64,000 nt of DNA from Bugula neritina (lineage: Eukaryota > Animalia > Bryozoa). The DNA lies in assembly GCA_964035545.1 (NCBI GenBank), contig OZ037769.1:1302001-1366000 (forward strand), in the 5' to 3' direction. A program made the translations under genes and the position numbers. The notes under the pieces were generated by a model. The model saw only the letters and a list, made by a program, of their open reading frames with translations. It was not told the origin of the DNA and did no database searches. Each line of letters starts with the position of its first letter. The first letter of the stretch is position 1. This document shows positions 1,029-44,352 of this stretch, piece by piece.

Positions 1029-4000
1029 TGAATATAGCAGAAGGAAGATATACATTCAGCAAGACTCATCTTAACATATACGTGGTTAGTGGGAAAGCAG
1101 TAGATGTAAACCCTAGGTCGTTTTATAGAAGTGAAGACAAACCTGATCAGTGGTGGAGAGTTAAACTGAATGAGACTGTATATGTTAGAGTACTAGCTAT
1201 TCGTAATAAAGATTGTGAGTATAATATTTTTGTTAATAATTTACAAAGCAGCTTATTTGCTACTTAATCAGAACTTGTATTAAAGAGTTGAAATAATTGC
1301 CCAACTATAGTTAGGGTAAATTTTAGGATAAGGTAGAGGCATATTTTAAAAAAAGAAAGATTACCATCGCAAAAGTGATAGAATGACATTTGTCGAACTA
1401 CTTTAAATATTTAGGAATCGGTTTTATTCAATTTAGTTAAGAGATTTAGGTTTCATTCTTTAAACGTAATGTAAATAGCTTTATCTTCTACTATTTTTAC
1501 TCTAAACACCCATAAGACTTTTGGGAAATAACATACAACTTTTTTTACGAACAATTCAATAAAATCCAATAAAATTCTTTTTTGTTTTACTTCAGCTGAG
1601 AGGTTTAAAGACGTATCAATCCTGTCATCAACACACTCCACAATAACAGAAGATCCAACACCTACAAGTTCAGAATGGACTCTGGTCATGTCTGGGATAT
1701 CACGAGAATCAGATAGAAGTTCTACAGAGCTTACATATAACTTTGATCTAACAAACGAGTTACAAACTAGACACATTGCTCTCTACAGCTCTAATAGTAT
1801 TGGACTGAGCATGCTAGAAGTTCAGATATTTGCATATGGTAAGTGGTTTAACGTTATATTTCATTTGTACATATATATATATATATATATATACACTCAC
1901 AGAAGTTTATAGTCGCTATCCCTGTGAGAAACTCCTGATGGAAAGGGTTTTTGGTAAAATTGGCTGAAAGCTTATTTAATTGAAACTATCATTGAAATTA
2001 AGGGTTGACAGAAAGGGATTGCTTTATAGTTTACGGATGTTTAAACAAAACACTTTCCATTGGTTGTTTTTAGACTTGATGCTTACATGGCAAGACTCTT
2101 CAGCGATGTTGGCAGCAACCAGTAGTTCATGTTTGACTCTCACATGGACACGACCAGATGCAGAATTTGGTGAAATATCTAATTATAGAGTTAGTATTTA
2201 TATTACTTGTATTTACTATACTATCCATTCTCTTAAAACAATTCAAAGTTAGTTCAAGTTTATTCAAATACATGAGAATTTATGTTTAGTACAAGTGTAC
2301 TTCACAAAATGACTGGACTATCACAGAGAACACCAAGTTACAGACACAGATATGTGGATATTCCCATTCTTCAGATGTACAGTGTGAGCTGGAAGCATGG
2401 AACAGTCATCAGTACAGTTCAATTACTACTTCTGTAGTTCAAACCCTCTGTCTAGGTATGGCTTGACATATAGAAGTCATTTGGGCAATTTGTTTTTTAT
2501 GTAACAAAGGTCTGATTATTAGTATAATTTGATTATTTTATCTGACATTATTATTACAATGAACGTATAGTAAAACTAGCTATTCAAACTTTTCCAGGTA
2601 TTTTCCTATATTAAAAGTATGTTTTATATAAAGAATGTCAACATAATTAGTTATTTCAGTTCCTATTAGAAAATACCTAAGTTTGTTACAAACATGCTTC
2701 AAATAATTTAATTAGAAGCCAAATTTATTTCAGCTCCTTCAAAGCCAACAGCAGTTAAATTAACAAGCGCCACACCAGTTAGAATGGTGAGAGATGGTAA
2801 AGTTCAACTACTGTATTCTGTACAGTGGACTGTAAGTATTATTGGATAAAGTGTAATGTTAAGATTTTCGTTTGATAGTCACAAAATGACGATTTGGATA
2901 CTGCCCATTCCAAAACACTTCATTTATAAGAAAATGTTTTCAACATGCTCAAATTTTGTATACATACTATAGCAAACTTACATAAATATACTTGTAAAAG
3001 TAAAATAAATTATTATAGTTCAATAATGACTTAACATATAGCTATTTTTGTCAAAACCAGTTAGAATAAATTTAGAAAACATTATAGAACAGTGAAGGAA
3101 TTCTTCCATTTAGCACATATTTTTATTTCCCTCTTTGGTCTTTTTAATGAGGTAATGATTCACAATTGTATATTTCCATTTCTTGTTTTAGGCACCCCAA
3201 AGTTCAAACTGTGAAAGTCTAACAGGATATGATGTAAGATATCCAACAACTGAATCTACACCTACACAAGTCAGTAGTACCAGTACTAGCATACTGACAG
3301 ATGGTGATGTGGAGATAACTTTCTCTGTTAGAGCTAAGAATAATGATGACCTCTACTCAGAATATGAGACACTTGTGTTTACATCTGATAAATTAGGTAA
3401 GATTTACCTGCAAATTGCTGTTTTGGTACCATCAAATTAATTATGCATAACAAATAATTTGCCCATGTTAGTTTGTTGTGAATTGAAAACAAAACTCATT
3501 CAAAACCTTCTTTTTTAAAAGGTCCAATTTGGAACGGTACTTCCCAGCTTCTTATCCACCCATCTAGTAGTGAGTGTGTCTTTCTATCCTGGACTCTACC
3601 AGATTATTCAAATGGTGATATACAAAAGTATGAGGTGAGATATTCTCATTCTATATAGATTTTGTGTTAAACATTTTTTTTGTAATTCTGTATCATTCCG
3701 CTGACTAATAAAAGAGTTTTCAGTTCTTATTGAAATGTTTCTAGATCAAGTGTACAGGTCAAACAGACTGGACAGAGGTTGAGTCATTTAAACTGGACAC
3801 ACTTGCCTGTGGACTTTCTCCAGACACAGAAGTAGAGTGTACAGTGAGAGCATGGAATGAACAGACATTCAGTGATGTCATTACATCGGATAAAATCAAG
3901 ACTTACTGTTCAGGTATCTTTTTATAAAATACATTATTCTGTATATTCATATTTTATTGTCTTGCAAACATATTTCTGTAGGCAAATGATAAAAAGAGTC

Positions 4001-7000
4001 GAAAGACATGTATTAGTTTATGAGATTGTTTCAGGTGAAGATTGTATGATTTGTAATCGCCGACTTTATTACAGCTTCTACGTCTCCAGGAAGTATTCAG
4101 TTCAATGACAAAGGTTTAAAAACAGATAGTAGCAGAAAAAGAAGGGAATATCTCATTACTTGGCAGGTCTGTGTATATAGTTTATCAAATAATAATGTAA
4201 CAGAGAACTATAATGTCGCGTATTATATCCAATGCAAGTGTCCTTTTAAATTAAAGAAGCTATCCTTTTTTTAATCAAAAAGTTTACTTACCATGTTTAA
4301 AGAAATAAAAAGGTTTATTGTTTTTGTATTATAATGCAATATCAGCATACTGATAGTTTACCTTGTTACATAACAGGCTCCATCTACAATAAACTGTGAC
4401 AGTATAGCAGAGTATGAGATAAGATTTCCAACATCCTTTTCTGATATAATAACAATGACCTCTAGAAGTATGACAGTGTATACAGAAGGTGATGTAGAGG
4501 TCAGCTTCTGGGTGAGAGCTGTGAACAATGCTGGAAATATATCTGAACCTCGTATTAGAACTATTACTACTGCTACTTTCAGTAAATCATTTTATTAAAT
4601 GTATGTAAGAAACACATCTCTTTTAATATAGGCATTTGTATTATATATATTATATTAAATTTATGCAAGAACAAATTGGTTTTCATTAATATATGTTAAA
4701 TAATCTAACAATAATATAATATGAATATGCGACTTAGTAATAAATCTTGTTGATTAAGGCATTAACATATTTATTCATATAAATCATAGTTTATAAATCA
4801 ACGTTTATTTATGAATATTTTGATGCCTAAGTCAACGATAGTTAATACCTAGTCACTTAGTATGCTTTAATTGATATATGCTTTAGTGTATTGCAGCCAA
4901 CAGTTGCTTTATTAATTATTCCTCAAAAAGTTGCTAAAATGCTGTTACTTTTTACAAAGAGGTATTATACATTTATTTGCAATAGTTTCAAGCATTTTAC
5001 TTACAATCATAATTATATTAATGATAGACTAAACATTCCTTACAAATCTTTCATCATTCTGAATTTTATGTGCAAAATGAATCATTTTTAAATAATGTAT
5101 TGTCATAAAAATCACAAAATTAATTTCCTTGTGTACACAACTCTTCATCTCAAAATGTTTCTAGGGCCCCAGATAGCACCACGAGATTTCCAGTTGAAAG
5201 TTATCAACTCAAGTTGTATAAGGTTGTCATGGCAACTACCAAAATATCCTAATGGACCAATCACACAGTATGAGGTAAATATTTAAATAACAAATATGTA
5301 CATATGTATGTACATTAGATATTTATTATAATGTTTGGTGATGCTTGATACTTCAAAAATGTAGTTGGTATTATATACTTTAAATTAATTATCTCATTTT
5401 TTGTTCACTCTAAAAGAGTCATAAATAAAACCAAAACTTGTGACTCATTGTAGTACAAGTGTACTGGACACAGTGACTGGCCCATTGTTGATAAGGCAAC
5501 TCTTGACTCTGTGGAATGTGGATATTTAGCCAATCAGCTGGTAGAATGTGAGATATTTGCTAGAAATAGCAAAGGAAAGAGTGATAGTGCCAGAAAGGAT
5601 ATAAGAATTGTCTGCGCAGGTAAACTATCAATTGTCAAATTATTACAACTCTTCCTGTTTGCGGTAAGTATCAGGAACTGTAATAAGTGTAATTCAAGTC
5701 CTTCAAATTGTCTGGATAGAATATTTAGTGTTATTAGAGTAAATCTATATTGACAATAATGTGATGTAACTATTCAATGATGTAATATAACTTCTTCTCA
5801 TAACATATTTCAGCCCCAGAGTTCCCCCTTGACTTGTCTCCATACATCCTAGAAGTATCTTCCATCAACTCTGATGGTCTGGCAGAACTCAATTTGACTC
5901 TATTAACTTCCTCAGTGGTAAGTTTAGTTTAAAGTAGTAAACCAATCTTCAAATTGCTGCCTATGAATAGTAACTTTATTTTTGCAAAATATTGTGTATG
6001 CAAACTTGAGTAAAGTTATCCAAGAAAACCTTCTATGGTATACAGAAGTTAAAACACTTTTATTTAAATGCTTTTCTTTTTATGCAATTTTATCGACTCA
6101 TAATCAGTCGTATTCTATGACAAGTTAAATAAGCCTATATACTTTGTGTTTTAAAAGCAAAACATAACTTTAATTTGCTCTCAATTTTCACAGATCAGAA
6201 TAAACTGTGCCTCACTCACAAGTCTAGAGTATAAACTCAGTGATCAAGACAACTACACGAATGCTGGAGAATTTATTTATGGACTACAACCCTACACTAA
6301 CTACACTCTGCATATCAGAGCTACTAATAATGAGCATTTTACTCAGAATCTAACTTGGATATTGCTGACAAAACAGCTGGGTAATTATTGTTTAAATTTA
6401 CTAAATATCAATAATATATTGTATACACATATTATGTTGTGTTGAACTGGGCTCTTTAAGTATATTTATAAAAGATATTTATTTGTTTTCAATCATGTAT
6501 CTACCAACATGGCTTGATCTGATATACTATCTTTACCATCTTAGCTCCAAGTGATTCTCCAAAAATAATAACAGGAATTGAAGCCAGCTGTGTAAATTTA
6601 ACCATTTCTCCACCTGAGCATCCTAATGGACTTTTAACGCATTACTCAGTAAGTTGTAAACTAAAATGAGGGTTTTAAGAGCTTTAATAATTTTCAACAT
6701 TAAAGTGGCAATAAAACAGTGTTATTAATCATGTTTTCAAAATGCCTTCTCTTCTATAGTATGCATGTGACGAGGTGAACATAGGAATAGATGAGAATCT
6801 CACCAAAGTTGTTGATAGCATATCTGTGAGTTATAACGGGGAGAAGGAAACTAAACTCTCACTCTGTAACCTGACTTCAGCAACCAGAATTAGATGTACA
6901 GTAAGAGCTGTGAACAGTGCTGGAGAAAGTCCAGTCGTAGTGGTAGATGAATACACCAAGCTGAAACGTGAGTAGCCATATTTAACCAGGTAATTGCTTG

Positions 7001-10000
7001 GAAAACACATTAAAGATAAAAAAATTTGAGGATAAATTTGACGGAGAAAACATTGAAGGATGAATTTGAATTTTAATTTTATCTTCTTGGCAGAAGAGTC
7101 TGTGTAAAATATGCAGAAAACAACAGAAGTGACTGTCACACTTTTGTTATTTATTCATCTCAAGTCAAAGCAAGGTCTTGTTCAGACACTATTGACAGTT
7201 TTTTCATATGTTGCCAAAATATGGTTTACTACGTAGTATATGCTGTTTTATAAGTATTTTTGTTTCTTAAGTTAATTAAAAGACCATCATTTACATTGAT
7301 TATTTATTGCAGAATATTTTATTTAGATATATAAAGCAAGTTTAATGACAAAGAAATGATGTCAAAATTTAAAGGTTTACTATAATTCTATTCCAGTAAA
7401 AGATGGATATGATACCATAACAGAAATACCATCATCTTCTCCTGGAGAATCACTTTCGTTAACTATTTCCACACCTTTGTTTGAGAATGGAGAAGTGAGG
7501 TTTGTCTAGTCTATATATAAAACACAAATTTACATGATGTGATAGTAATTGACAGGAAATGTCAGTTAAACACTTATCCAAAGATCGCAATGATTGTAAT
7601 TTTCTTTTGCAGCAAATACCAAATAGTTCTCCAACAACAGTCTCATCAGAACAGAAAGAAGAGAGATTTCTCATTAGAAAGTGACGGATGTAACTCAACT
7701 CAACTATTCAGCTACTCTGTATCTCAAGAGAAAGGGTTAACATGTTACATAACAGCAGAGATAGATGTAGAGACTGATGGTGAAACAACATTCAATATTG
7801 GTGATGGTAAAACATATGGTGGATATAAGAATGTGGATCTGGTTCCTGGAGCAGACTACTTCTTGGTGGTTGTAGCAGTTGTCACAGGGGAGGTACGATT
7901 AGGCATCAAAAAACACAAAGAAATTCAAATGTGTTTAGTAAGGAATAAGATTAGGGCTTGCTTGTTTGACTTTCAACATAGTTTGAAACGTGATTGGTTG
8001 AAAATGGTTTTGATAAACATTAGTCTCCGTAAAACATATGTTTATTATCTACTATAAAACATGTTGATATTATTTTACAGACTCTATTTAATTTTAATTT
8101 CATGAACTTGAATCTCTTTAAATGAAATACCATATTTAAACTTTTTAGTATGGTTCTGCTTTTTTTACAGAATTCAAATCGAAGTTTCATTCAATTCTTC
8201 CCTCACACAAGCGTCACAGGTAACTATTCAACAATTGTTATGTTGTTCTTCTTTTACTACAATTGTAGAAATTGGATGACATTATTAATATTATTATTTG
8301 TTTTTGTTTTAAATAGTCAACTAACCAATAAACTAATCAATAAACTAATTAATCAACTAGTTATTCAACTTTGCTAGTAAATGCTTTATAATCTCCCTTA
8401 TCACAGCTCCAGCTGAAGTAAGATCTACTGTACCACCACCTCCACCTAAGTGTAGAACAGGATGCGTAGTTGGAATAGTCATGAGTCTGATAGTTTGTCT
8501 GACTGTAGGTGCCGCAGTTGCTGGATTTGTAATATTTCGAAGGTAAGGCTAACAGTTATTTTGATAGTAAATTAATGTTAAACTACAGGATTAATGAAAA
8601 GACATCATTCTCCTTTGTATAGCTACATAACATTATACTCTTCAAATTTGCACTTAATTTACATCATATGTACTTCATGCAATATAGATTACAGTTAGAA
8701 ATGTGTAGCCAATATTCTTATACCATATATTTTAGGAGACAGGCCAAAGGTTCGAATGAAGGAGTGTCACCTGCTCTTTCATTAGGTAATAAAAAGTCGT
8801 CTAGCAATTTTGAATAAAACCAATTATTTTTATTCGTTTATATAGCTAGTTTTCTGATGCTAGTCAAATTGAAATTAGAAAATATTCTAACAGAGATTGC
8901 TTGTAGTTATGACATTTCATAGTTTGAAAAAAAAAATATGACCAAAAGTTGAAAGTTTGCATCAAATTTCAAAATAAACCTGCAAAATTCATCCTAAACC
9001 TATGTTTTGGATTACAGAAGCAAAAATGTTTTTGTTTAGTTTCAGTATCAGAGGTCTCACCAGCTTTAGAAGGGCCGTCAACATCTCCTCAACAACCTGC
9101 CCCATCATCACCAGAGAATGAGGCTATCCCAGTGTCTCAACTAGCTCAGTATATTACAGAGAAGCTAATGAATGATATACTGGAACAGTACAAGGTAAAC
9201 CCCATGCTTTATATTCATATTTGCCAGTAGCAAACTGTTTAGTTTATTCATACACTTAAATCTGATGCATTTATTTGTTACAAATTCTTTCTACTAGAAA
9301 CTTAAAATGTGTACTCTAGAATTCAAATAAGCTTTGTGTGTTTGTATGACGGTATAGGTAGGAGAAAAACACATCATATATAGTAGAGAAAATAAAACAG
9401 GAAAATGTTTTATAAATGTAATATGGTTATTTTTATTAAATAATTTTTGAACCAAGTCAAAAAGCTGTTACTCTACTAATAAAAGATTCAATAGACACAC
9501 TCTTTAATGCTTATATTTGGCAAGCTGGTAAAGCTGTGCATTCTTGTAAAAACATATGATCAAGTAACTACCAGTAAGCTCACAGTCAGTAGGTTTGTTT
9601 TGCTCACAATATGATGATTAATTCAGATTCTTGAGAAACTAGAGAAGCCAGTGATGAGAGCTGCTTCTCGGCCTGAAAACAGAGGCAAATGTAAATACAT
9701 TGGGCTGTATCCAGGTAAGTGGTAAGAGAAAAGGTCCTGGGCAGGGGCATTGTAGCCTGTAGGCAACTCGTGTTTCACAGAATGCAAAGCAAATGAGTTA
9801 AAAAATAAGTTTGAAATAGAAAATACAAATGGTATAAAACTAGAAGATATAATAGTAAAAAGCATTCATGATGTGGCAATAAACAAATTTTAAGATTTCA
9901 CCTGCTTTCATCTTTAAAGTTGTATTTGGGTGTCACTCAGAACTACAAATGAGCAGCAGCCAGATAAACTGAGACATGGAAGCCTTGCAAAAGTACTTTT

Positions 10001-13000
10001 CAATCCAAAATGACTTACATAACAATTAGCATAATCATATATTCTGGTTACAATCTAAACTATATACACAATAAAGATACACGTTTGTTGTTTTATTTCA
10101 GAGGACAAGACAAGAGTGGTACTGGAGAGGAATGGTGGAGAGGGTAGTGACTTCATCAATGCCTCTCATATAAAGGTACACATCTACATGTATATGAGCA
10201 CAAACTAATACTACATCTAAGTACTTAAAATTGTGAAACTCATTTAACTTATTTGCTTGATTTTATAGTTCTATGACTTGTGTTTTATGGATACACCGAT
10301 CAAGATCTGTTTATTGCAGCTCAAGGTAAGTTTATATATCTTCTGTAAAATTATACATGAAGGAATAAAATAATCTGCTGTTGAATGCATTATTTACACA
10401 AATTACTATTGACTTTTAAACCATAATAAAAATATATACCTATATTTTATTGCTGGAGTTACATATACTGCGGCATATGATTACATAAACTCTAATTCAC
10501 ACTTGACTGATCTCAACTTAGACTACAAATCTTGACAGCAAGAATTAACCACATAGTCTGCCTTTAAATCCCAAAGATGTTAGGGATGACTCAACTTAGT
10601 GTAAATCTAAGCAAGTCATTGTCTACGTTTACATTTGTAAAGAATTTTAGTGTGAAATCTAAGCAAAATATTATTGTCTATGTTTACAGGACCTCAGGAG
10701 CGCACTGTTGATGACTTTTGGCTCATGATTTGGCAACAGAAGGCAAAAGGAATTGTCATGGTTACAAACCTAATCGAAGGTGGTAAGGTAGGTTTATCAC
10801 TAATAGGAGACTGGTTGTGAAGAGACATAAGGTAACGTACACTTCATACTGCATTACAAGTTCATTACCCAAGCTGAGCTTCATAGCTGACAATCATACT
10901 CACTAGCATAAAACTCAAGGTTTTTAAGTTACCAGTAGCTGTCATATTTAAAAATTTTGGTCAAGCAAAGCTTTTATTTGAGTAGAAAGTACAAACATTA
11001 TATTCAAAACAATGAAATTTAAATTACATAACTAGAAAATAGATCAATTTATATAATACATTACAAGGTTTGAGTGTAAAATATAAATTATAGTATAGCT
11101 AACACAATTCTACAATCATTTAGATGAAGTGTGTGCAGTACTGGCCAGACAAAGTCGGGGAGAGCTCAACGTTTGGAGACATCAAAGTGACGTTTATTGC
11201 ACATGAGTTGGTGGCTGACTACATCATCAGAACTATTTCAGCTGAGATGGTGAGTCTGAAAGCAAACTATTCACTCATAATTTAACCATTGATTCAATAA
11301 TACATTGATGAAATAACTAAAGTTGTATAAGTCTAAATAAAATCAACTACACTCGTATAAATTATGATCGCCTAACAAAACAAACCACCGCTCCATGAAG
11401 GCCGACTATTCATGCAATCCACTTGCTTTAGCAATTTTTGATAATTCATATAGTGTTGAACACGTTTTCATAACTCTATAAATAATTTCTATTAGCTACT
11501 AATTTCATTTTTGTTTACAGAATGGACGGAGGATACAGCTAAAACAGTTCCATTTTGAATCATGGCCAGACCAAAGAGTTCCTGAGGTGATGAGTCCTCT
11601 TTTATCCTTTGTGAAAAGAGTAAGATCTGAAACAAGAAGATCTGCTGGACCTTTAGTTGTTCATTGCAGGTAACAAACATTACCTACCAAACGTGAGGCA
11701 AACGCATGGTAGACATGACAAACATTTTTTATTATAGTAGCCGAAGTTTTACAATTTCATAAGTTTATATTTCATGAGGCTAACTTATTGTAACATGTAC
11801 AGTGCCGGAGTTGGTCAGACAGGGACTTTCATAGCTATCAACATTTTGGCGAAAGAAGCAAAAGATAAAAAAGAAGTGAATCCGTTTGAGTGTGTGAAGG
11901 AGATGAGAAAGAGGAGACCTTGCATGGTACAGAAACAGGTGAAATTCTGAATGTTCACTGGATACTTTAAACACATGGCATGCAATAGCTAAATGCTAAA
12001 ATTGATTCTGCTTTTTATAGTATAAATTGTGTTTTTGTCCACAGGTTTGTATTGTATAGACTTGTATATAAACCATAATACTACTACAAGCTCTACGTAG
12101 CTATATAGATCAGTCTTTTGTTGCCATTTACTCAGTATAGTGAATTCAGCTTGTTTCATGCTAACTAAACCATCAGCGCTTGTCACTAGAGGCTCAATTT
12201 TTCATCTGATTGTAAAGCTCACATGTTGCATTGAAATTACCCAGTAGTTTCTGTAGTGTAATATGGTTAGTATGTCTGGTTTTAGGCCGGAAGTCTCGGG
12301 TTCGAATCCCAGTCAGATATAAAGTCTTACATCAATTACTGTGTAACTTACAGTGTGTGTTTTCTGTAATCCCGGTGGGGGCAAAAGGTTCACATCACAC
12401 ACTGTTTCATGTTTTCTGTAGTCATGTCATCACGCAGTTCTCTATTACAGGAACAATATCAGTTTGTTTATGAGGCCTTAGAAGAGTTTCTGGTAACAGA
12501 TGACTATGTTTGTGAACCAGCTTTGCTCATGTCTAAGATTCAGACACATTTGGATGAGACTACAGACACGGCTACTTATGCTAATACTATGAGTAATAAC
12601 CAGGATCTGATCAGTCAAGAGTTTGAGGTGAGTAAATTTGTATAACATGATTAATTTCCAAAGATTTTTTTTTTGAAAACTGTTTTAGGAAATCTATCCA
12701 ACACTAAATTTTTTTCCTTTTATATGTATATTTGTTTACTTGTAGAGACTTGAGGTTAAAAGAAGTCAAGCTCTGATGGGCTTCTCTGTAGCGATGAGTG
12801 AAGAAAACAAGGACAAAAATCGAGATCCAAACGTCTTAGCAAGTAAATTCTATTTTAACGACTTCTTTCAAAAGTGTTGCTAATTTTATTTTAATGCTTA
12901 AGTAGTGTATAGCCTGTTCGAAAATATTACATAGTGAAACTTTACTTTATTCCCTATTACATCTATTTAAATTTTCAAAGATTTTAATTGCAAGGCAGTT

Positions 13001-15268: not shown

Positions 15269-16599
15269 AAGGATAAACCTTAATATATATTATACTATAT
15301 ATATATATCTATTTTGCTAACCACAATACTCAACTTATCTGCTTATATTTAGCCTACCCTGTATGTTAGGCACCCTCTATGTAACAACAGTAACACAATA
15401 ATATTTACCTGCAAATATTGTGGAATGAATAACTATAGCAATTACCCAACCCTAACTTTTCAGTCCTAAAGTTCATTTCTCACCTTACCTTTCTTCACCA
15501 TTTCTTAATCGGGTGGCGAGCTTTTGCCTAACTCCCAGGCTAAACTTTATTTGATGAGTGATAATCAACATAATAACATTTTGCTAAATCAGAGTGATAT
15601 ATATATTTACGTATATTTTTTTGAAAGGTTGAAACTATATAATAAAACATTAAATAAACAGCTAAATACCAAACTGGAGACACGATTAATAAAGAGATGA
15701 CAAACTCATGTGATGCGTGAATAAACATAACAAAAATGATTGGTGATGATTGCGTAATCAATTTGGTCGGAAGACGCATGACATGATTGCTACAAATAAC
15801 GTTTGTGTATCACAAGTCACAACTGGTTTGATAGTTATGTTCTAGTTGTATAAAGATATGAACACAATGCAGTGTATTCAAGTTAAGCAATAGGTTTAAT
15901 GAGCAGTAGTAGCTTTGTGGGTAGATTTCAGTATGACATTATATGTCTTGAGCTCTCCTCTATTAGAAATGGTGTATAATATATTATATCTGGTCACTGC
16001 TCAGTCTAAACTAAACAGAAAAGCTTACATAAGTACCAATACCCATTGAGTTGTCTTACGTTGCAAAGCAAAGCTTAAAACTATCTTAGAAAATATCTTT
16101 AAGCATAGCAAGTTGACGATTGACAAGGAAGTTGTTTTAACTTAAAACTTGACTTGTATATTCCTTTAGCATGATTTCAAATAACTCTAGCCTAATTTCT
16201 ACTCATGTGACTGTGGATTTAACTACTTCTCAGTCTATACAAATATTTTTGTTATATTTTCTTTAAACTAATGAATGCTCAAACTGAATAGAAAGCCTTC
16301 TATTAGCAAAAGCAATAAAAAGCTGACAAAAGACCTATAGAACAGATATATTATTATATAGAAACTCAACAATGAACAGGGAAGTTGATTTAAACAAAAC
16401 TTCTTTACTTACAATATATTCTATTGTGAGTGAAACTCTAATATGTTCTACATAGCACTTCAGTAACACATGTATGTGAAGGTAGAATAGGTTGAGAAAC
16501 AGCCTAGAGTAAAGTTTTGAAGTAGATCATTCATACTATGTTGAGTGAAAGAAGACAATATATTAGTTACAGTATCTATGAAGGTCATCTAAGCAGAAG

Positions 16600-27000
<10,401 letters not shown>

Positions 27001-28227
27001 TTATTAAGTTTATTCTACTCTAACATTAGTATCCAGTAAACTAAAGTACTTCTATATGCTTATGATGTGATATAAAGTCTAAAGTTTGGTTGATCTACTT
27101 TTTACTAACATCTACAATAACATCTCTTACAAACTAAACCAATTTTTACAAGATATATATGAATATATTTCACATTTTGTTTGTTTTTATTGAATATCAT
27201 ATGCTACACCATAGTAGTAATAATTAATGTGTTACACCATAGTAATAGAGTTCTCTCATAGTCTATATATCTAACACGGACCTTCTTATTTATTTATTTT
27301 TAGAATTTTTAAACCTTTCACTCACACTTTGCTTTTTTAAAGTAATCTTCTAATAAACCTTAATTATGATACTATGTTTTTTAATGAACCTAAATTATGA
27401 TACTAGGTTTTTTATGGACACTATTTAGCAAATGGCTGAATTATTAGTACATGTCAGTATGTATGAAGAATGGGCAGTTCCAAAGTAGTAACAGGTTTGA
27501 AATCAATCAATTACATGCATTATATAAAAAGAGTTTTTAATAGCTGTGGTATAATTTCTACTCATGTACTTGTGAATATAACTCAGTCTATTCATATATT
27601 TCTGCTCTATTACATGCATACTAATGAATGCTCAAATTAAATATAAAAGCTGTCATGATTACTATTATACCCAATGAGTTGTGTTACATTATGATGTAAA
27701 GCCTAAAAACTAACTTAGAAAAGATCTCTAAGACTAGCAAATCTACTATTGACAAGGAAGTTGTTTTAACTTGAAACTTGACTTGTATATTATTTTAGCT
27801 TGATTCCAAATACCTTTAGCCCAATTTCTACTCATGTGACTGTGGATCTAACTACTTCTCAGTCTATACAAATGTTTTTGTTCTATTTTCTCTTAACTAA
27901 TGACTTCTCAAACTGAATAGAAAGCCTTCTATTAGCAAAAGCAAAAAAAAAGCTGACAAAAGACCCATAGAAAAAATCTATTATTATAGAAACTCAACAA
28001 TGAACAGGGAAGTTGTTTTAAACTAAACTTCTTTACACACAATATATTCTATTGTGAGTGAAACTCTAATATGTTCTACATAGCACTTCAGTAACACACG
28101 TATGTGAAGGTTGAATAGGTTAAGAAACAGCCTAGAGTAAAGTTTTGAAGTAAATTATTCATACTGTGTTGAGTGAAAGAAGACAGTATATTAGTTAGAG
28201 TATCTATGAAGGTCAACTAAGCAGAAG

Positions 28228-31192: not shown

Positions 31193-31285
<93 letters not shown>

Positions 31286-34200: not shown

Positions 34201-37200
34201 CATCATTCTGAATTTCAAGTGCAAAATGACTCATTTTCAAGTAATGTATTAACATAAAAATAACCAAAATTCATTTCCTTGTGTACACAACTCTTCATCT
34301 CAAAACATATCTAGGGCCCCAAATAGCACCACGAGATTTCCAGTTGAAAGTTATCAACTCGAGTTGTATAAGGTTGTCATGGCAACCACCAGAATATCCC
34401 AATGGACCAATCACACAATATGAGGTAAATATTTAAATAACAAATATATATACATTGTAATTATTACACATTTATTATAACGTTTGGTGATGCTTGATTT
34501 TTCAAACATGTACTCAAAATGTTAAATTAGGATTAAATTAGATCAAATGAAGATATGAGATAAATTTATAGAATATGTTATATTAGTATAATATAAGACT
34601 TTAAATTTATCTCAAATTTTTGTTCACTCTAAAAGAGTCATAAATAAAACCTAACCTTGTGACTCATTGTAGTACAAGTGTACTGGACACAGTGACTGGC
34701 CCATTGTTGAGAGGGCAACTCTTGACTCTGTAGAATGTGGATATTTAGCCCATCAGCTGGTAGAATGTGAGATATTCGCTAAAAACAGCGAAGGAAAGAG
34801 TGATGGTGCGGAAAATAATGCAAAAACTCTTTGTGCAGGTAGTTGTCTATTGTCACTAATACCATAGCTCTGCTTGTTTGCTGTAATACATCAGGAACCT
34901 AAGTATAAATGTAGTATAACTTCTTCTCATAACATATTTCAGCCCCAGAGTTCCACTTTGATTTGTCTCCATACATCCTAGGAAAAGCCTCTAACAACTC
35001 AGATGGTCTGGCAGAAATCAACTTGAATCTACTTAATTCCTCAGTGGTAGGTTTAGTTTAAAGTAATAAGTTGATTTTTAAATTGCTGCCTATGAATAGT
35101 AACTTCATTTTTTGCAAAGTATTTTGTATGCAAACTTGAGTAAAGTTATCCAAGGAAATCTGCTACGATATACAAAAAAAAATTTAAACACTTTTGCTTA
35201 AATGCTTTTTTTATCGACTTATCATCATTCGTGTTCTATGACAAGTTAAATAAGTCTACTTTGTGTTTTAAAAGCAAAACATAACTTTAATTTGCTCTCA
35301 ATTTTCACAGAACAGAATAAACTGTGTCTCACTCACAAGTCTAGAGTATAAACTCAGTGATCAAGACAACTACACAAATGCTGGAGAATTTATTTATGGA
35401 CTACAACCCTACACTAACTACACTCTGTATATCAGAGCTACTAATAATGAGCAATTTACTCAGAATCTAACTTGGACACTGCTGACAAAACAGCTGGGTA
35501 ATTATTGCTTAAATTTACAAAATGCCAATAATATATTGTATACACGTCATATTATGTTGTGTTGAACTAGGCTTTATCAGTTTTTATAACAGATATTTAT
35601 TTGTTTTCAATAATGTATCTTGACTTGATCTGAAATATTATCTTTACCATTTTAGCTCCAAGTGATTCTCCAAGAATAATTACAGATTTTGAAGCCAGCT
35701 GTGTGAATTTAATCATTTCTCCACCTGAGTATCCCAATGGACTTTTAACACATTACTCTGTAAGTTGTAAACTGAATTGAGGCTTTTAAGAGCTTTAATA
35801 ATATCCAACATTAAAGTGGCAATAAAACAGTATTAATCATGTTTTCAAAATGTCTTCTCTTCTATAGTATGCCTGTGACGAGGTGAGCATAGGAATAGAT
35901 GAGAATCTCACCAAAGTAGTTGATAACATATCTGTGAGTTATGAGGAAAAGGAAAGAAAACTCTCACTCTGTAACCTGACCTCAGCAACCAGAATTAGAT
36001 GTACAGTAAGAGCTGTGAACAGTGCTGGAGAGAGTCCAGTCGTAGTGGTAGATGAATACACTAAGCTAAAACGTGAGTAGCCATATTTAACCACATAATT
36101 GCTTGGAAAACACATTAAAGATAGAAAAAAATTCAGGATAAATTTGACGGAGAAAACATTGAAGGATGAATTTGAAATTTAAGTTTAGCTTCTTGGCAGA
36201 AGTGTCCGTGTAAAATATGCAGAAAACAACAGAAGTAACTATCACACTTTTGTTATTTATTCATTTCAAGTAAAAGCAAGGTCTTGTTCAGACACTATTG
36301 ACAGTTTTTTCATATGTTGCCAAAATATGGTTTATTACGTCGTATATGCTGTTTTATAAGCATTTTTGTTTCTTGAGTTAATTAAAAGACCATCATTTAC
36401 ATTGATTATTTATTGCAGAATATTTTATTTAGATGTATAAAGCAAGTTTAATGACAAAGAAATGATGTCAAAATTTAAAAGTTTACTATAATTATACTTT
36501 AGTAAAAGATGGATATGATACCATAACAGAAATACCATCATCTTCTCCTGGAGAATCGCTTTCGTTAACCATTTCCACACCTTTATTTGAGAATGGAGAA
36601 GTGAGGTTTGTCTTGTTTAAACGCTAAAAAAATGAACAGTATATGATAGTATTTGACTGGAAATGTCAGTTAAACACTTATCCAAAGATCTCAATGACTG
36701 TAATATTTCGCAATGATTGTACTTTTCTTTTACAGCAAGTACCAAATAGTTCTCCAACAACAATCTCAACAGAACAGAAAGAAGAGAGATTTCTCATTAG
36801 AAAGTGACGGATGTAACTCAACTCAACTATTCAGCTACTCTGTATCTCAAGAGAAAGGGTTAACATGTTACATAACAGCAGAGATAGATGTAGAGACAGA
36901 TGGTGAAACAACAGTCAATATTGGTGATGGTAAAACATATGGTGGATATGAGAATGTGGATCTGGTTCCTGGAGCAGACTACTTCTTGGTGGTTGTAGCA
37001 GTTGTCACAGTGGAGGTTTGATTAGGCATCAAAAACACAAAAAAATTCAAATGTGTTTACTGTTTAGTAAGAAATAAGATTATGGCTTGCTTGTTTGACT
37101 TTTTGACTTCAACATAGTTTGAAACTTGATTGGCTGAAAATGGTTTTGATAAATAATAGCCTCCGTAAAATATATGTTCATTATCTACTATAAAACAGGA

Positions 37201-40200
37201 TGATATTATTTTACAGATTCTATTTCATTTCAATTTCATGAACATGAATCTTTTTATGAAGTACCATATTTAAACTTTTTAATATGATTCTGCTTTTTTT
37301 ACAGAATTCAAATCGAAGTTTCATTCAATTCTTCTCTCACACAAGCGTTACAGGTAATTATTCAACAATTGTTATGTTGTTCTTTTTTTACTACAGTTGT
37401 AGAAATTGGATAACAGTTATTTTATTATTTTATTTTTGTTTTAAATAGTCAACTAATCAATAAACTAATCAATAAACTAATTAATAAACTAATTAATCAA
37501 CTAGTTATTCAACTTTGCTAGTAAATGTTTTATAATCTCCCTTATCACAGCTCCAGCTGAAGTAAGATCTACTGTACCACCACCTCCACCTAAGTGTGGA
37601 ACAGGATGCGTAGTTGGAATAGTCATGAGTCTGATAGTTTGTCTGGCTGCAGGTGCCGCAGTTGCTGGATTTGTAATATTTCGAAGGTAAGGCTAACAGT
37701 TATTTTGATAGTAAATTAATGTTAAACTACAGGATTAATGAAAAGACATCATTCTCCTTTGTATAGCTACATAACCTTATACTCTACCAATTATTTGCAC
37801 TTACTTTACATCATATTATGTACTTCATGCAATAGATTAAAGTTAGAAATGTGTAGCCAATATTCTTATACCATATATTTTAGGAGACAGGCCAAAGGTT
37901 CGGATGAAGGAGTGTCACCTGCTCTTTCATTAGGTAATAAAAAGTTGTCTAGAAATTTTGAATAAAACCAATTATTTTTATTCGTTTATATAGCTAGTTT
38001 TCTGATGCTAGTCAAATTGAAATTAGAAAATATTCTAACAGAGATTGCTTGTAGTTATGACATTTCATAGTTTGAAAAAAAAATATGACCAAAAGTTGAA
38101 AGTTTGCATCAAATTTCAAAATAAACCTGCAAAATTCATCCTAAACCTATATTTTGGATTACAGAAGCAAAAATGTTCTTGTTTAGTTTCAGTATCAGAG
38201 GTCTCACCAGCTTTAGAAGGGCTGTCAACATCTTCTCAACAACCTGTCCCATCATCACCAGAGAATGAGGCTATCCCAGTATCTCAACTAGCTCAGTATA
38301 TTACAGAGAAGCTAATGAATGATATACTGGAACAGTACAAGGTAAACCCCATGCTTTATATTCATATTTGCCAGTAACAAGCTGTTTAGTTTATTCATGC
38401 ACCAAAATATCATGCATTTATTTGTTACAAATTCTTTCTACTAGAAACTCAAAATGTGTACTCTAGAATTCAAATAAGCTTTTTGTGTTTGTATGACAAT
38501 ATAGGTAGGAGAAAAACACATTATATATGGTACAGAAACTCAAATAGGAAAATGTTTTTTAAATGTAATTGGGTTATTTTCATAAAGTGAGCTTTTGTTT
38601 TGAATAAAGTCAAAAAGCTGTTACCCCACTAATAAAAAATTCAATAGACACATGCTTTAATGTCTATATTTGAAAGCTAGTAAAGCCGTGCATTCTTGTA
38701 AAAATATATTAGCAAGTAACTACCAGTAAGCTCAGTAGGTTTGTTTTATCAATTTGATGATTAATTCAGATTATTGAGAAACTAGAGAAGCCAGTGATGA
38801 GAGCTGCTTCTCTACCTGAAAACAGAGGCAAATGTAAATACATTGGGCTGTATCCAGGTAAGTGGTAAGAGTAAAGGTGCTGAGCAGGTGCATTGTAGCC
38901 TGTAGGCAACTCGCGTTTCACAGAATGCAAAGCAAATGAGCAAAAATTAAGTTTAAAAGAGAAAAAACAATTTAGAGGTATTAGAGTCATAAAACTAAAA
39001 CATATAATAATAAAAAAAATTCATGATGTGGCAATAAACAAATTTTAGGATTTCATCTGCTTTTATCTGTAAAGTTGTATTTTGAGTATCACTTAGAACT
39101 GCAAAGAAACAACGGCCAGATAAACTAATACATGGGATCATTTTAACGGCATTTATTAATCCTAAATAATTTAGATGACAATCAGCCAGTAGATTTTGAT
39201 TACAATCTAAATTATACACAATAAAGATATGTGTATTTGTTGTTTTATTTCAGAGGACAAGACAAGAGTGGTGCTGGAGAGGAATGGTGGAGAGGGTAGT
39301 GACTTCATCAATGCCTCTCATATAAAGGTACGCATCTACACGTATACATGAGCACAAAGTAATACCACATCTAAGTACTTAAAATTGTGAAACTTATTTA
39401 TAACTTATTTGCTTGACTATTTAGTTCTATAACTTATGTTTTAGGGATACACCGAGCAAGATTTGTTTATTGCAGCTCAAGGTAAGTTTATATGTCTTCT
39501 GTAAAATTATACACAAAGGAATAAAAAAATCTACTATTGAACGCATTATTTACTTATATTACTATTGACTTTTAAACCATAATAAAAATATATACCTATA
39601 TAGTTTATTGCTGGAGTTACATATACTGCGGCATATGATTGCATAAACTCTAATTAACACTTGACTGATCTCAACTTAAACTGCAAATCTTGACAGCAAG
39701 AATTAACCACATAGCCTGTCTTTAATCCCAAAGATGTTAGGGATGACTCAACAACAAACAGCTCTGTAAAGAATTTTAGAGTAAAATCTAAGCAAATTAT
39801 TGTCTATGTTTACAGGACCTCAGGAGCGCACTGTTGATGACTTTTGGCTCATGATTTGGCAGCAGAAGGCAAAGGGGGTTGTCATGGTTACCAACCTAAT
39901 CGAAGGTGGTAAGGTAGGTTTATCATTAATAGGGGACTGGTTGTGAAGAGAAATAAGGTAACATACTTTTATGCTGCATTACATGTTCATTACCTAAGCT
40001 GAGTTTAATAGCTGACAATCATACTCACTAGCATAAAACTCAAGGTTTTTAAGTTACCAGTAGCTGTCATATTTTGAAATTTTGGTCAAGCAAAGCTTTT
40101 ATTTGAATAGAAAGTACAAACATTATATTCAAAACAATGAAATAGAAATTACATATTACAAAATAGATCAATTTATATAATACATTACAAGGTTTGAGTG

Positions 40201-43200
40201 TAAAATATAAATTATAGTATAGCTAATACAATTCTACAATCATTTAGATAAAGTGTGTGCAGTACTGGCCAGACAAAGTCGGGGAGAGCTCAATGTTTGG
40301 AGACATCAAAGTGACGTTTATTGCACATGAGTTAGTGGCCGACTACACCATCAGAACTATTTCAGCTGAGATGGTGAGTCTGAAAGCAAACTATGCACTC
40401 ATAATTTAACCATTAATTCAATAATACATTGATTCAATAATACATTGATAAAATAACTAAAGTTGTAAGTCTAAATAAAATCAACTACACTCGCATAAAT
40501 TATGACAGCTTAACCAAACATAACACAGCCCCATGAAGGCCGACTATTCATAAAATCCTCTTGCTTTAGCAATTTTTGATAATTCATATAGTGTAAAAGA
40601 AGTTTTAATAACTCTAGAAATAATTTCTATTAGCTAATACTAATCTTATTTTTGTTTACAGAATGGACAAAAGATAAAGCTAAAACAATTCCATTTTGAA
40701 TCATGGCCAGACCAAAGAGTTCCTGAGGTGATGAGTCCTCTTTTAACCTTTGTGAAAAGAGTAAGATCTGAAACAAGAAGATCTGCTGGACCTTTAGTTG
40801 TTCATTGCAGGTAACAAACATTACCTACCAAACGTGAGGCAAACACAAGGTAGACATGACAAACAGTTTTTATTATAGTAGCCAGAAGTTTTACAATTCC
40901 ATAAGTATATATTTCATGAGGCTAAATTATTGTAACATGCACAGTGCCGGAGTCGGTCGGACAGGGACTTTCATAGCTATCAACATTTTGGCGAAAGAAG
41001 CAAAAGATAAAAAAGAAGTGAATCCGTTTGAGTGTGTGAAGGAGATGAGAAAGAGGAGACCTTGCATGGTGCAGAAACAGGTGAAATTCTGAATGTTCAT
41101 CGGATACTTTAAACACATGGCAATAGCTAAATGCTAAAACTGATTCTGCTTTTTCTAGTATAAATTGAGTTTTTGTCCACAGGTTTGTATTGTATAGACT
41201 TGTATATAAACCATAATACTACTACAAGCTCTACGTAGCTATATAGGTCAGTCCCTTGTTGCCATTTACTCAGTATAGTGAATTCAGCTTGTTTCATGCT
41301 AACTAAACCATCAGCCCTTGTCACTAGAGGCTCAATTTTTCACCTGATTGTAAAGCTCACATGTTGCATTGAAATTACCCAGTAGTCTCTGTGGTGTAAT
41401 ATATAGTTAGTATGTCTGCCTGTAAGTCGGAAGTCTCGGGTTCGAATCCCAGTCAGATATAAAGTCTTACATCAATTACTGTGTAACTTACAGTGTGTGT
41501 TTTCTGTAATCCCTGTGGGGGCAAAAGGTTCAAATCATACAGTGTTTCATGTTTTCTGTAGTCATGTCATCACACAGTTTTCTATTACAGGAACAATACC
41601 AGTTTGTTTATGAGGCCTTAGAGGAGTTTCTGGTAACAGATGACTATGTTTGTGAACCAGCTTTGCTCATGTCTAAGATTCAGACACATTTGGAAGAGAC
41701 TACAGACACGGCTACTTATGCTAATACTATGAGTAATAACCAAGATCTGATTAGTCAAGAGTTTGAGGTGAGTAAATTTTTATAACATGAAAAATTTCCA
41801 AAGATTTTTTGTGAAAATTGTTTTAGGAAATCCATCAAACGTTTAATTTCTTTCCTTTTATATATATTTGTTTACTTTTAGAGACTTGAGGTCAAAAGAA
41901 GTCAAGCTGTGATGGGCTTCTCTGTTGCGATGAGTGAAGAAAACAAGGACAAGAATCGAGATCCAAACGTCCTAGCCAGTAAATTCTATTTTAACGTCTT
42001 CTTTCAACAGTGTTGCTAATTTCATTTTGATGTTTAAGTAGTGTATAGCTTGTTCGAAAAATATTACATAGTGAAATTTTGGTGTATTCTCCATTAGATT
42101 TATTTAAATTTTCAAAGATTTTAGTTGCAATGCAATCTCAATGACAGAGTATGTTGCACCATATTATCTACGTTCAGGTGACAGAAGCTGCATGTGGGCT
42201 GATGGTGAATATATAAATGCTGTTTCAATCAATGTAAGTATTTAGCAAAGTATATAGACTGAGTCTGCAGCTTATAGGTTCTCTGCTGTATTTGTTGACA
42301 TATTTGTTGTAGTAGGAATTTTTGAATTATATGAAAGTATTTAAGTAGTTATATTTTAGTATATGTAAATTTTAAACCTGAATAGCTTATAAATTTTGCC
42401 TGCATTACATTAGTACAATTATAGAGAAGGCTAAAAATATTTCTACAAAAGCTTCCCTTTTTCTGGTTGTTAGCTTTAAGCCTATTTAATAGGAATTTAT
42501 GCAGTTTTTGTCAAAATATAGCTTGCTCACTTTAATAATAATTTAGGATTACCGGAAGAAAGGACATATCATAGTGACCCAGCTTCCTCTTCCTAACACC
42601 GTGAAGGACTTTTGGGCTATGGTTATTGATAATGGTGTAAAGCTCATTGTACAACTGCTAAATCAGGTTTGCATTTGACTACAGCAGCGTTTTGTTATAG
42701 CTTTAAGTAAAACATTGTCTGTTGAAAGCTATTTTATGGCAGCTTTTGCAATAGCTTTTTACTGGTACCTTTTGTTTGATGAGTACAGCTCAAGAACTGA
42801 AAGAGGAGAGTTTGCTCCTGTAAAAGATGCCGGCAACTTGGAATCTATATTGCCCAAATAATTGTTAAAATTTTGTCAGAGATATAAACTGTTGGCATTA
42901 TCCCAAAGGTTGAGTTGTGTCCTGCATCTGTGCATCCAGCATCCCTGCTATCAAAACACATAGTCATCCGTGCCGCTCAGCACCCGTGTGGCATTGTAAC
43001 TGACAAACTTGTAAGAAATAATAGTTTCAATAGGCAATACTCTATCAACTTCTATGATATACTTGTTTAGTTATGTTTGTATATTGATAAATTTTATTTT
43101 CAATTAACAGCTGTAAAACATGTTGCAGGATGAAAGCTTCTACCCAGCTCACAATAGTCATACCATGAAATGTGGAAAGTTCCTCATCACCAGAATGAGC

Positions 43201-44352
43201 AGTGAGGTTGGGGATGGAATCACTTTAATAAAGATATCTATTGAGAACAGAGGAGCTGTAAGTGTCAATAATATAGACATTTCATAAAGTTAGAGTACCT
43301 ACACATTGACTGTTGTACTAGCTATTAAACAAAACTGATAAGTATAATTTTGAAATCTTTGAAAACAATAACAGGACATTTTTTGAAACTGTAGCAATTC
43401 ACTGAGCAAAATAATTGATAATTTATTCAGATTTTTCGCTTCTTATACAACTGGTTCGAGAATTAGACTAACTATAGCATAGTTCAATGTGAATTGAAAT
43501 AAAATGGTAGTTTATCAACAACACATAATAACTTGTATGATGTGCAGGTGTACAATGCTGACATAATCTTGGTAACTGATTGGCCTGAGACTGAAGAGTT
43601 CCCTAAAACAACTTCAATGTTGGCATATCTGGGAGAGCTGGAGAAATACCAGAGACAACACGGAGATCAAAGAATATGTCTTGTTGACTTGTAAGTAAAT
43701 ACTCCAGTTATTGATTTATTCTCAGTTTTCTTATATAAAAAAGAGCTACGGTCTTTAAAGTTAATCAACTCTGAAATTGAATTAGATGAGTGGAAAGACA
43801 CCTTCCCTTTACCCATAAATTACTGTCCTTCATTGTAGTATCTCATTGTATCTAATTTGCTGATTTGATGTACATAAACAGCTGTTGCGATTTTGAATTG
43901 TTACTATATATAAACCTATTTTTTTAGAAATGGGAACAACCGCTGCGGAATATTTGTCTCGGCATACAATGCTGTGGAGAAGCTGAAGACCGAACAGGAA
44001 GTTGATCTGTACAACACAGTGCTGATGTTGAGACACGCTCGTCCTGAGTTTGTTAGTGATCTGGTAAGTTCTCTATCAACACCATTTTATTGTAATATTG
44101 ATTACGTCATGTACCTGTGAGAGCACCGCAAATGGAATAGTTTTTTTCTAAAGGATAGAGTAAACTTTGCATGTGTTTTAGTTAGGTCATAGGATGCAAA
44201 TTGAGTTATATACATTTTAGTAGCTGAAATTGGAGATAGATAGACCTAATAATCCTGTGATGCATATTGTGTTTTAGAGGAGTTATGTCTACCTGTACCA
44301 ACTTCTTCAGCAGTACATAGATACTTTCTCTGAGTACGGAAACTTTCAGTGA
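28228..44352 (+). CDS. Receptor-type protein tyrosine phosphatase, copy C (complete: signal peptide, 2 lectin/discoidin-like domains, 7 FN3, TM, active D1, pseudo-D2)
   Basis: ATG 28228 [23 protein letters not shown]; exons 28625-28810, 29311-29547 onward mirror copies B and A; TM 37551-37686; D1 with WPD and intact [12 protein letters not shown] (CGG at 40958-40960); D2 ending SEYGNFQ*, stop at 44350-44352. No lesion noticed in the exons checked. Confidence 0.92.
31168..31281. repeat. (AT)n microsatellite, intronic
   Basis: TA run in the intron equivalent to 19696-19875 and 1871-1893. Confidence 0.95.
41384..41457 (+). mobile_element. tRNA-derived SINE head, paralog of 12246-12317
   Basis: Same B-box GGTTCGAATCCC in the same intron of copy C, so the insertion predates the A/C duplication or was copied by conversion. 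Confidence 0.55.

What the first reader, a model, noticed from the sequence alone, without database searches (positions are those of the whole stretch)
1029..44352. Paired-receptor locus: one lectin/FN3 ectodomain wired to an active phosphatase, an ITAM tail, or a dead phosphatase
Seen: three tandem genes share exon-for-exon, highly similar ectodomains. C ends in an intact D1/D2 tyrosine phosphatase, B ends in Sushi-TM plus a tail with 8 tyrosine motifs including an ITAM, and A ends in a phosphatase with two inactivating changes. Known: vertebrate paired receptors (KIR, LILR, Ly49, SIRP, Siglec) and cnidarian Alr genes couple similar ectodomains to opposing ITAM/ITIM outputs and evolve by duplication and gene conversion, but the inhibitory member recruits SHP phosphatases rather than carrying one. 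Inference: here the inhibitory arm is an intrinsic receptor PTP, and the neighbouring ITAM tail is a plausible substrate, forming a self-contained on/off/decoy recognition module, possibly for immunity or allorecognition. I do not recognise this architecture from described families, but cannot exclude prior description.
Basis: partly seen in the sequence, partly recalled or inferred. Interest (0 to 1): 0.92.

Follow-up and report, generated by a model that had tools for sequence, protein, structure and literature searches.

The report
Bryozoan lectin receptors with swapped outputs
A moss animal (Bugula) carries clusters of look-alike surface receptors that end either in a built-in phosphatase or in an activating tyrosine-motif tail and that trade their recognition tips, a candidate on/off immune-recognition system, although the 'dead phosphatase' copy is simply a broken gene.

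Summary
Mostly real, and larger than reported. The window (Bugula neritina complex) holds the 3' end of a 7-gene tandem cluster of receptors with two F-type-lectin-fold domains and an FN3 stalk. C is an intact D1/D2 receptor phosphatase. B, plus two cleaner upstream copies, ends in Sushi-TM and a tail with a conserved ITAM. Two more copies run into Sushi-like repeats. Corrections: A is a recent pseudogene (frameshift, dead splice acceptor, Arg-to-Gln), not a decoy. B is not exon-for-exon: one exon is dead, three are deleted. New: lectin tips group across output types (A+B3, C+B2) while stalk bases group by output. Genome-wide, of 48 juxtamembrane stalk exons 21 lead to a phosphatase, 16 to a B-like Sushi exon, none to both, and three clusters mix the two. 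RNA contigs show stalk-Sushi and stalk-phosphatase-type splices in family members; the Sushi-tail splice and co-expression are untested. Closest known: snail SudRes1/LG5R lectin-EGF receptors with or without phosphatase, and ITAM/ITIM paired receptors. Opposed signalling is inferred, not shown. The scan noted similar loci elsewhere in this genome.

The parts
1029..15268 (+). Copy A, exons 4-40 (exons 1-3 lie 2.0-3.6 kb upstream of the window). Phosphatase-type gene, probably a recent pseudogene or null allele; a mosaic with a B3-like tip and a C-like base
10287..10288 (+). A: exon-28 splice acceptor reads AT, not AG; skipping the 37-nt exon or using the nearest AGs shifts the frame early in D1
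   Evidence: the C ortholog in another assembly has AG
11803..11938 (+). A: P-loop exon, [10 protein letters not shown] (catalytic Arg>Gln, CGG>CAG at a CpG)
16600..26999 (+). Copy B (B1): signal peptide, 2 F-type-lectin-fold domains, shortened FN3 stalk, furin site RKKR, Sushi, TM, Tyr-motif tail; 1164 aa if exon 14 is skipped
16987..18065 (+). B lectin domain 1 (exons 2-3): the most variable part among paralogs (pN/pS 0.84); fucose-binding His replaced by Tyr
23220..23329 (+). B: dead exon-14 remnant (1-nt loss, in-frame TAG), followed by deletion of exons 15-17 (two FN3 repeats lost in all)
24432..24711 (+). B exon 21: Fn3_PTPRU-type juxtamembrane domain with RKKR furin site, shared with the phosphatase genes
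24954..25762 (-). About 0.8-kb insertion in B1 intron 21, absent from B2/B3; repeat, probably the 3' end of a LINE (no Pfam hit; inference from ORF and microsatellite tail)
25781..25829 (+). B-type exon 22 (49 nt, same length and phases as exon 22 of C)
   Evidence: spliced in an RNA contig
26000..26209 (+). Sushi/CCP exon
   Evidence: PF00084; homologs behind PTP-less stalk exons genome-wide
26552..26999 (+). TM + 121-aa tail in one exon: YEEP, 4x YSKV/M repeats, ITAM YSRL-x8-YDKI, YIN; no consensus ITIM or ITSM
28228..44352 (+). Copy C: intact 40-exon receptor tyrosine phosphatase, 1801 aa
   Evidence: ortholog with intact D1 in B. neritina GCA_010799875.2
28625..31106 (+). C: two F-type-lectin/F5_8C-fold domains (exons 2-5)
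31320..37353 (+). C: seven two-exon FN3-like repeats plus the Fn3_PTPRU juxtamembrane domain (exons 6-22)
   Evidence: FN3 call rests on motifs and weak single-exon Pfam hits
37551..37686 (+). C: transmembrane exon
38770..41767 (+). C: PTP domain D1, catalytic motifs intact (pTyr-loop Tyr, [14 protein letters not shown]-loop)
41882..44352 (+). C: PTP domain D2, no catalytic Cys (usual for RPTPs)

Best explanation
A birth-and-death cluster of cell-surface recognition receptors that come in two old signalling classes. Shown: all copies share a lectin-fold tip and FN3 stalk; class C carries an intact receptor phosphatase, class B a Sushi-TM-ITAM tail; recombination or gene conversion moves tips between classes; the same two classes recur in other clusters; A is a recently broken class-C gene. 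Inferred: a ligand bound by the tip clusters B, a Src-family kinase phosphorylates its tail, and a Syk/Shark-type tandem-SH2 kinase plus Nck/Grb2-type adaptors start a response. A class-C receptor with a near-identical tip binds the same or a related ligand, is drawn to the same contact and removes those phosphates, setting the threshold. The likely use is recognition of microbes, parasites or neighbouring colonies.
For: Intact models for C, B2, B3 (B2's exon 17 uses the downstream acceptor). ITAM is rare by shuffle and kept in B1-B3, three metagenome homologs and an orphan fragment while the upstream repeats vary in number. Tip tree joins A+B3 and C+B2, base tree joins A+C against B1-3, all 100/100, AU p<1e-4 both ways. 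Lectin domain 1 pN/pS 0.84 against 0.34-0.44 for FN3 and 0.20-0.29 for PTP. Genome-wide 21 PTP, 16 Sushi, 0 both, 11 undetected among 48 stalk exons; mixed at C5:1.28-1.34, C5:2.19-2.32 and C3:7.63-8.14 Mb. Two SH2 exons followed by tyrosine-kinase exons at C7:14.37 Mb and SH2s followed by PTP at C3:23.74 Mb. Spliced RNA contigs for both classes. Snail analogues map to parasite resistance.
Against: No data on co-expression, ligand, binding or dephosphorylation. No RNA contig covers the TM-tail exon in four runs, and none matches B1 exactly. Tip exchange is also the neutral result of unequal crossing-over in any tandem array, and with six tips the pairing pattern is not unlikely by chance. pN/pS below 1 does not show positive selection. 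The fucose-binding His is missing, so the ligand is unknown. Receptor PTPs such as CD45 and PTP-alpha often activate Src kinases (own knowledge). One homolog in another assembly has YSRP, which breaks the ITAM.
Confidence: 0.5

Rival explanations
1. Two receptor classes that share ectodomains only because they sit in tandem arrays that recombine; they work independently (different cells or ligands, or adhesion and development) and are not a coupled on/off pair.
For: Mosaicism is everywhere in the cluster, also within classes. Some clusters hold one class only (C1:3.37-3.47 Mb Sushi, C1:3.96-4.22 Mb PTP). PTP-less receptors with this stalk domain exist in cnidarians and vertebrates.
Against: Both classes are kept side by side in three separate clusters although their Sushi exons have diverged to 27-40% identity, which suggests long joint retention.
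Confidence: 0.25
2. The pair is coupled but cooperative: C primes Src-family kinases (CD45-like), or ligand-driven dimerisation switches C off, so shared ligand binding amplifies B signalling.
For: Established RPTP biology (own knowledge); PMC12297450 discusses ligand-controlled occlusion of D1; B has no ITIM and equal-length stalks would not separate B from C by size.
Against: No direct evidence either way; in known paired families the second member usually opposes the ITAM member.
Confidence: 0.15
3. A is a functional decoy or pseudophosphatase receptor, giving an on/off/decoy trio.
For: A's PTP region was under purifying selection for most of its history (dN/dS 0.20-0.29); the exon-3 insertion is in a T run and could be an assembly error.
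Against: Three independent lesions; the acceptor loss gives an early stop that should trigger nonsense-mediated decay; Arg>Gln is a CpG transition; the ortholog in another assembly has neither D1 lesion; broken copies also occur elsewhere in the family.
Confidence: 0.07
4. The array is partly an assembly artefact (haplotypes joined in tandem).
For: A and B3 are 97% identical over 1.5 kb; I could not check read depth.
Against: No gaps in the region of a 17.7-Mb contig; copies differ by about 8% in introns with private indels; an independent assembly also has a B-type gene followed directly by the start of another copy, and a C gene next to the same downstream DNA.
Confidence: 0.03

Closest known systems
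Biomphalaria SudRes1 and LG5R receptor clusters (PMC12297450, PMC13712769)
   Same: Lophotrochozoan tandem clusters of single-pass receptors with a galactose-binding/fucolectin tip, some with tandem PTP domains (subgroup 1C) and some without (1B); haplotype variation, broken copies; associated with schistosome resistance.
   Different: Snail stalk is EGF repeats, here FN3 plus Sushi. The word ITAM does not occur in either paper and no pairing or tip exchange turned up in the passages I read. No phenotype is known for the bryozoan genes.
Vertebrate paired receptors (KIR, Ly49, LILR/PIR, SIRP, Siglec-5/14, CEACAM; own knowledge)
   Same: Clustered genes, near-identical ligand-binding ends kept alike by conversion, different signalling ends, frequent pseudogenes.
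   Different: There the inhibitory member recruits SHP-1/2 through ITIMs and the activating member usually uses an adaptor; here one class carries its own phosphatase and the other its own ITAM. No homology.
Hydractinia Alr family (PMC9546547) and Botryllus FF/FcoR (PMC12582321)
   Same: Colonial invertebrate, clustered receptor family with ITAM-type tails and pseudogenes; Alr has an FN3-like domain.
   Different: Ig or other ectodomains, ITIM-based inhibition, no intrinsic phosphatase; genetic link to allorecognition shown there, not here.
R2A/R2B receptor PTPs (LAR, PTP-mu/kappa/T/U) and lophotrochozoan 'RPTP T-like' models
   Same: FN3 stalk, furin site, Fn3_PTPRU domain, active D1 and dead D2. 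A Lineus longissimus protein has F5/8C-Kringle-FN3-Fn3_PTPRU-PTP-PTP; Watersipora has FN3 relatives.
   Different: No Ig or MAM domains; lineage-specific expansion into tandem arrays with PTP-less siblings.
Other outputs on the same stalk domain: arthropod Wsck kinase, cnidarian SRCR- or CUB-FN3 receptors with Tyr tails, a vertebrate Sushi-FN3 receptor
   Same: Fn3_PTPRU + TM joined to a kinase, a short Tyr tail or little tail: output swapping at this point is an old theme.
   Different: None of the 79 hits has a consensus ITAM or the stalk-Sushi-TM-ITAM order, apart from Bugula pieces.

Membership tests
Classical receptor PTP (copy C) | Signal peptide, ectodomain, one TM helix, tandem PTP domains | tested here: met
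Classical receptor PTP (copy C) | D1 catalytic motifs (pTyr-loop Tyr, WPD, HCX5R, Q-loop) | tested here: met
   KNRY reads KCKY, Tyr kept; same in the ortholog. Activity itself not assayed
Pseudophosphatase receptor (copy A) | Open reading frame through a catalytically dead PTP domain | tested here: not met
   frameshift in exon 3 and lost exon-28 acceptor
ITAM receptor (B class) | Yxx(L/I)-x6-9-Yxx(L/I) in the cytoplasmic tail, conserved | tested here: met
   broken in one homolog (P0003)
ITAM receptor (B class) | Binds Syk/Shark tandem SH2 when phosphorylated | not testable with these tools
   only a tandem-SH2 + kinase exon layout at C7:14.37 Mb, not identified by sequence
Paired receptors | Clustered genes with highly similar ectodomains and different signalling ends | tested here: met
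Paired receptors | Ligand-binding ends homogenised between the two classes | tested here: met
   (pattern shown; selection for it not shown)
Paired receptors | Inhibitory member carries an ITIM | tested here: not met
   no consensus ITIM/ITSM in the B tail; C carries PTP domains instead; C's cytoplasm was not scanned for ITIMs
Paired receptors | Co-expression and opposite signalling | not testable with these tools
   RNA contigs show presence only
F-type lectin | F-type fold and N-terminal sequence motif | tested here: met
   best PDB matches FBP32 (3cqo) and eel lectin (1k12); Pfam F5_F8_type_C below cut-off on single exons
F-type lectin | Fucose-binding His...Arg-x-Asp-x4-Arg/Lys motif | tested here: not met
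   His aligns to Tyr in domain 1 and to Tyr/Arg in domain 2; the RxDCC loop is absent; motif from own knowledge
Biomphalaria GBD-MEGF-RPTP family | Multiple EGF repeats in the stalk | tested here: not met
   stalk is FN3-like; no EGF-type Cys pattern in the models
Allorecognition locus | High allelic polymorphism and linkage to fusion/rejection | not testable with these tools
   one other assembly, about 15% diverged, probably another cryptic species

The most novel reading that the evidence does not exclude
Bryozoans have a genome-wide paired immunoreceptor system in which the inhibitory member is itself a receptor tyrosine phosphatase, matched by tip exchange to an ITAM-bearing twin, across several unrelated tip types, and one of these clusters controls colony self/non-self or symbiont recognition.
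Probability: 0.3. Interest if true: 0.9.

Novelty: new variant of a known kind. Interest (0 to 1): 0.72.

Why it matters
I found no paper naming recognition receptors or allorecognition genes for bryozoans (open-access library only). These clusters give named candidates with a testable wiring. If the phosphatase class opposes the ITAM class, paired-receptor logic has been built a second way, with the brake inside the receptor instead of an ITIM that recruits SHP. It would also suggest a mechanism for the snail resistance loci SudRes1 and LG5R, whose PTP and PTP-less lectin receptors have no signalling model: their tails can be scanned for ITAMs at once.

Tried and rejected
A as decoy: rejected for three lesions. 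Haplotype misassembly: unlikely. Fucose-binding lectin: motif absent. B as inhibitory ITIM/ITSM receptor: no consensus motif. B2 broken at exon 17: false alarm, the true acceptor is 36 nt downstream; my C model used the upstream one, so C is probably 12 aa shorter. Positive selection on lectin 1: not shown, pN/pS 0.84. RNA for the TM-tail exon: none in four runs, which does not show absence. Paper searches for this architecture found nothing.
Full report
Source. The window is C5:1,302,001-1,366,000 of a 216-Mb genome. Protein matches are to Bugula neritina models. DNA flanking the cluster is about 85% identical to assembly GCA_010799875.2, so this is a member of the B. neritina species complex, probably another cryptic type (inference).

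Observation. Self-comparison shows three tandem paralogs. Copy C (28228-44352) reads as 40 GT-AG exons without a stop: signal peptide, two F-type-lectin-fold domains, seven FN3-like repeats, an Fn3_PTPRU domain with an RKKR furin site, TM, D1 with intact catalytic motifs, and a dead D2. Copy B (16600-26999) shares exons 1-13 and 18-21, then has a 49-nt exon, a Sushi exon and one exon for TM plus a 121-aa tail with eight tyrosines: YEEP, four YSKV/M repeats, the ITAM YSRL-x8-YDKI and YIN. The ITAM core arises in 0.8% of shuffles. There is no ITIM or ITSM.

Copy A. The two reported changes are real: acceptor AG>AT at 10287-8 and P-loop Arg>Gln. The first is not a catalytic change: skipping the exon gives a stop 12 codons into the next exon, early in D1, and nearby AGs are out of frame or leave a 7-nt exon. 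Upstream of the window A also has one extra T in exon 3, which could be an assembly slip in a T run. A against C shows dN/dS 0.20 in D1 and 0.29 in D2, and the ortholog in the other assembly has the Arg and the AG. A is best read as a class-C gene that broke recently.

The whole cluster. Upstream DNA adds four genes, seven in 116 kb (C5:1,230,389-1,346,352): U5, U4, B3, B2, A, B1, C. B3 and B2 are intact 24-exon genes with the full stalk and the same ITAM. U4 and U5 follow exon 13 with a different 3' part of Cys-patterned exons, two of them weak Sushi matches; I found no TM exon, so they may be secreted (not fully modelled). U5 has four lectin domains and extra FN3 repeats. An orphan Sushi-TM-tail fragment with two stops lies at C5:8.289 Mb.

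Exchange of tips. In a tree of exons 2-7 with flanks, A joins B3 and C joins B2; in a tree of exons 19-21, A joins C against B1-B3. All these branches have 100/100 support and AU tests reject each grouping in the other region. A and B3 are over 99% identical around exons 4-6, and C and B2 around exon 4. So recognition tips move between output types. This is the pattern of vertebrate paired receptors, but unequal crossing-over makes it without selection too. Lectin domain 1 is the fastest part (pN/pS 0.84; 71-86% amino-acid identity in exon 2). Its best structural relatives are fish F-type lectins, but the fucose-binding His is replaced, so the ligand is open.

Genome-wide pattern. From match coordinates alone, 48 Fn3_PTPRU exons lie in about seven clusters and a few single loci. 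Of these 21 are followed by a PTP D1 exon, 16 by a homolog of B's Sushi exon within 2.5 kb, none by both, 11 by neither (lower bounds). Three clusters mix the classes (this one, C5:2.19-2.32 Mb, C3:7.63-8.14 Mb); on C1 the classes form separate blocks. At C5:0.47-0.53 Mb lectin, PTP and Sushi exons also alternate. The distant Sushi exons are only 27-41% identical to B's, so the two classes are old. I did not read those tails, so ITAMs there are unverified. The genome has a two-SH2-plus-kinase layout (C7:14.37 Mb) and an SH2-plus-PTP layout (C3:23.74 Mb), as expected for Syk/Shark and SHP2 (identity inferred from layout).

Expression. Contigs of four runs were laid on 22350-28340. One contig joins the last letters of exon 21 (9 loose letters plus AG) to the B-type exon 22 and on to Sushi; it differs from all three B genes at three diagnostic sites, so it is an allele or relative. 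Another joins exon 21 to the phosphatase-type exon 22. Both classes are therefore spliced and expressed somewhere in the family. Nothing covered the TM-tail exon. The Sushi-to-tail join rests on matching phases and conservation in three paralogs and two other assemblies.

Mechanism. Most likely (0.5): B-class receptors activate through Src-phosphorylated ITAMs and a Syk/Shark-type kinase; C-class receptors with matching tips come to the same contact and dephosphorylate them. Anatomy, conservation and exchange are shown; ligand, co-expression, substrate and sign are inferred. Rivals: independent receptors in a recombining array (0.25), cooperative CD45-like coupling (0.15), A as true decoy (0.07), misassembly (0.03).

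Known systems. The nearest is in snails: LG5R holds fucolectin-tipped EGF receptors without (1B) and with (1C) two PTP domains, and SudRes1 holds such RPTPs; both are tied to schistosome resistance (PMC13712769; PMC12297450). Neither paper uses the word ITAM. Hydractinia Alr (PMC9546547) and Botryllus FcoR (PMC12582321) use ITAM/ITIM tails without phosphatase domains. A lectin-FN3-RPTP model exists in the nemertean Lineus, and the same stalk domain carries a kinase in Wsck or short Tyr tails in cnidarians. The locus works like a paired-receptor cluster but fails the ITIM criterion, and it is not a member of the snail EGF family.

Verdict. New variant of a known kind; interest 0.72. Each part has precedent. 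I found no description of the combination (stalk-Sushi-TM-ITAM twins of RPTPs, tips exchanged, repeated across a bryozoan genome). The decoy arm is withdrawn. All searches were exon by exon; the joined-protein search and fold were left out.

Noticed in passing
G000:C5:1177219-1191650 (L020-L021): A more distant relative 38 kb upstream of the cluster: at least 11 FN3-like repeats, a Sushi exon 58% identical to B's, then TM and a tail ending YIDV-x8-YETI (ITAM-like, Val in the first half); no Fn3_PTPRU exon seen.
   Followed up: partly
G000:C5:1244584-1254377 and 1261101-1270900 (L006-L008): U5 and U4 3' parts, 96.6% identical over 9.8 kb: Cys-patterned, Sushi-like exons with no Pfam match for most and no TM exon found; a possible secreted fourth form.
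   Followed up: partly
G000:C5:8288613-8289522 (L014:8613-9522): Orphan Sushi-TM-tail fragment 7 Mb away, two stops in Sushi, no ectodomain exons nearby, ITAM spacing kept (YNEL-x8-YNKI).
   Followed up: yes
window:24954-25762: Repeat insertion private to B1 intron 21; very deep in RNA contigs (depth over 1000 in run X1), so an abundant or active element.
   Followed up: partly
L026 (GCA_010799875.2, VXIV02002407.1): B-type gene with fewer tail repeats, YSRP instead of YSRL and a +1 in Sushi, followed by a copy with frameshifted lectin exons; NCBI's model skips Sushi and TM. Pseudogenes or assembly errors.
   Followed up: partly
L028:1660-6100: LINE (endonuclease + RT) inserted in intron 10 of the C ortholog in the other assembly; its exon 21 has a +1 base.
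   Followed up: partly
window:48500-51100 and 59100-61300 (- strand): Flanking genes: one resembling GRAMD4 (from memory of the ORF text) and a PSI-domain, plexin-domain-containing-like gene; same order in the other assembly.
   Followed up: no
G000:C6:8.02-8.43 Mb and C1:3.96-4.23 Mb: Further tandem arrays of about 8-9 PTP genes each; the C6 array had no Fn3_PTPRU match.
   Followed up: no
G000 small contigs (C15-C314): Many intronless kinase matches read through TAA/TAG only: ciliate-code DNA, probably a contaminant or epibiont in the assembly.
   Followed up: no
window:46744-47354, 51326-51954, 60411-61030: Tandem repeats (about 45-, 60- and 61-nt units) and a 630-bp inverted repeat in the flank.
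   Followed up: no
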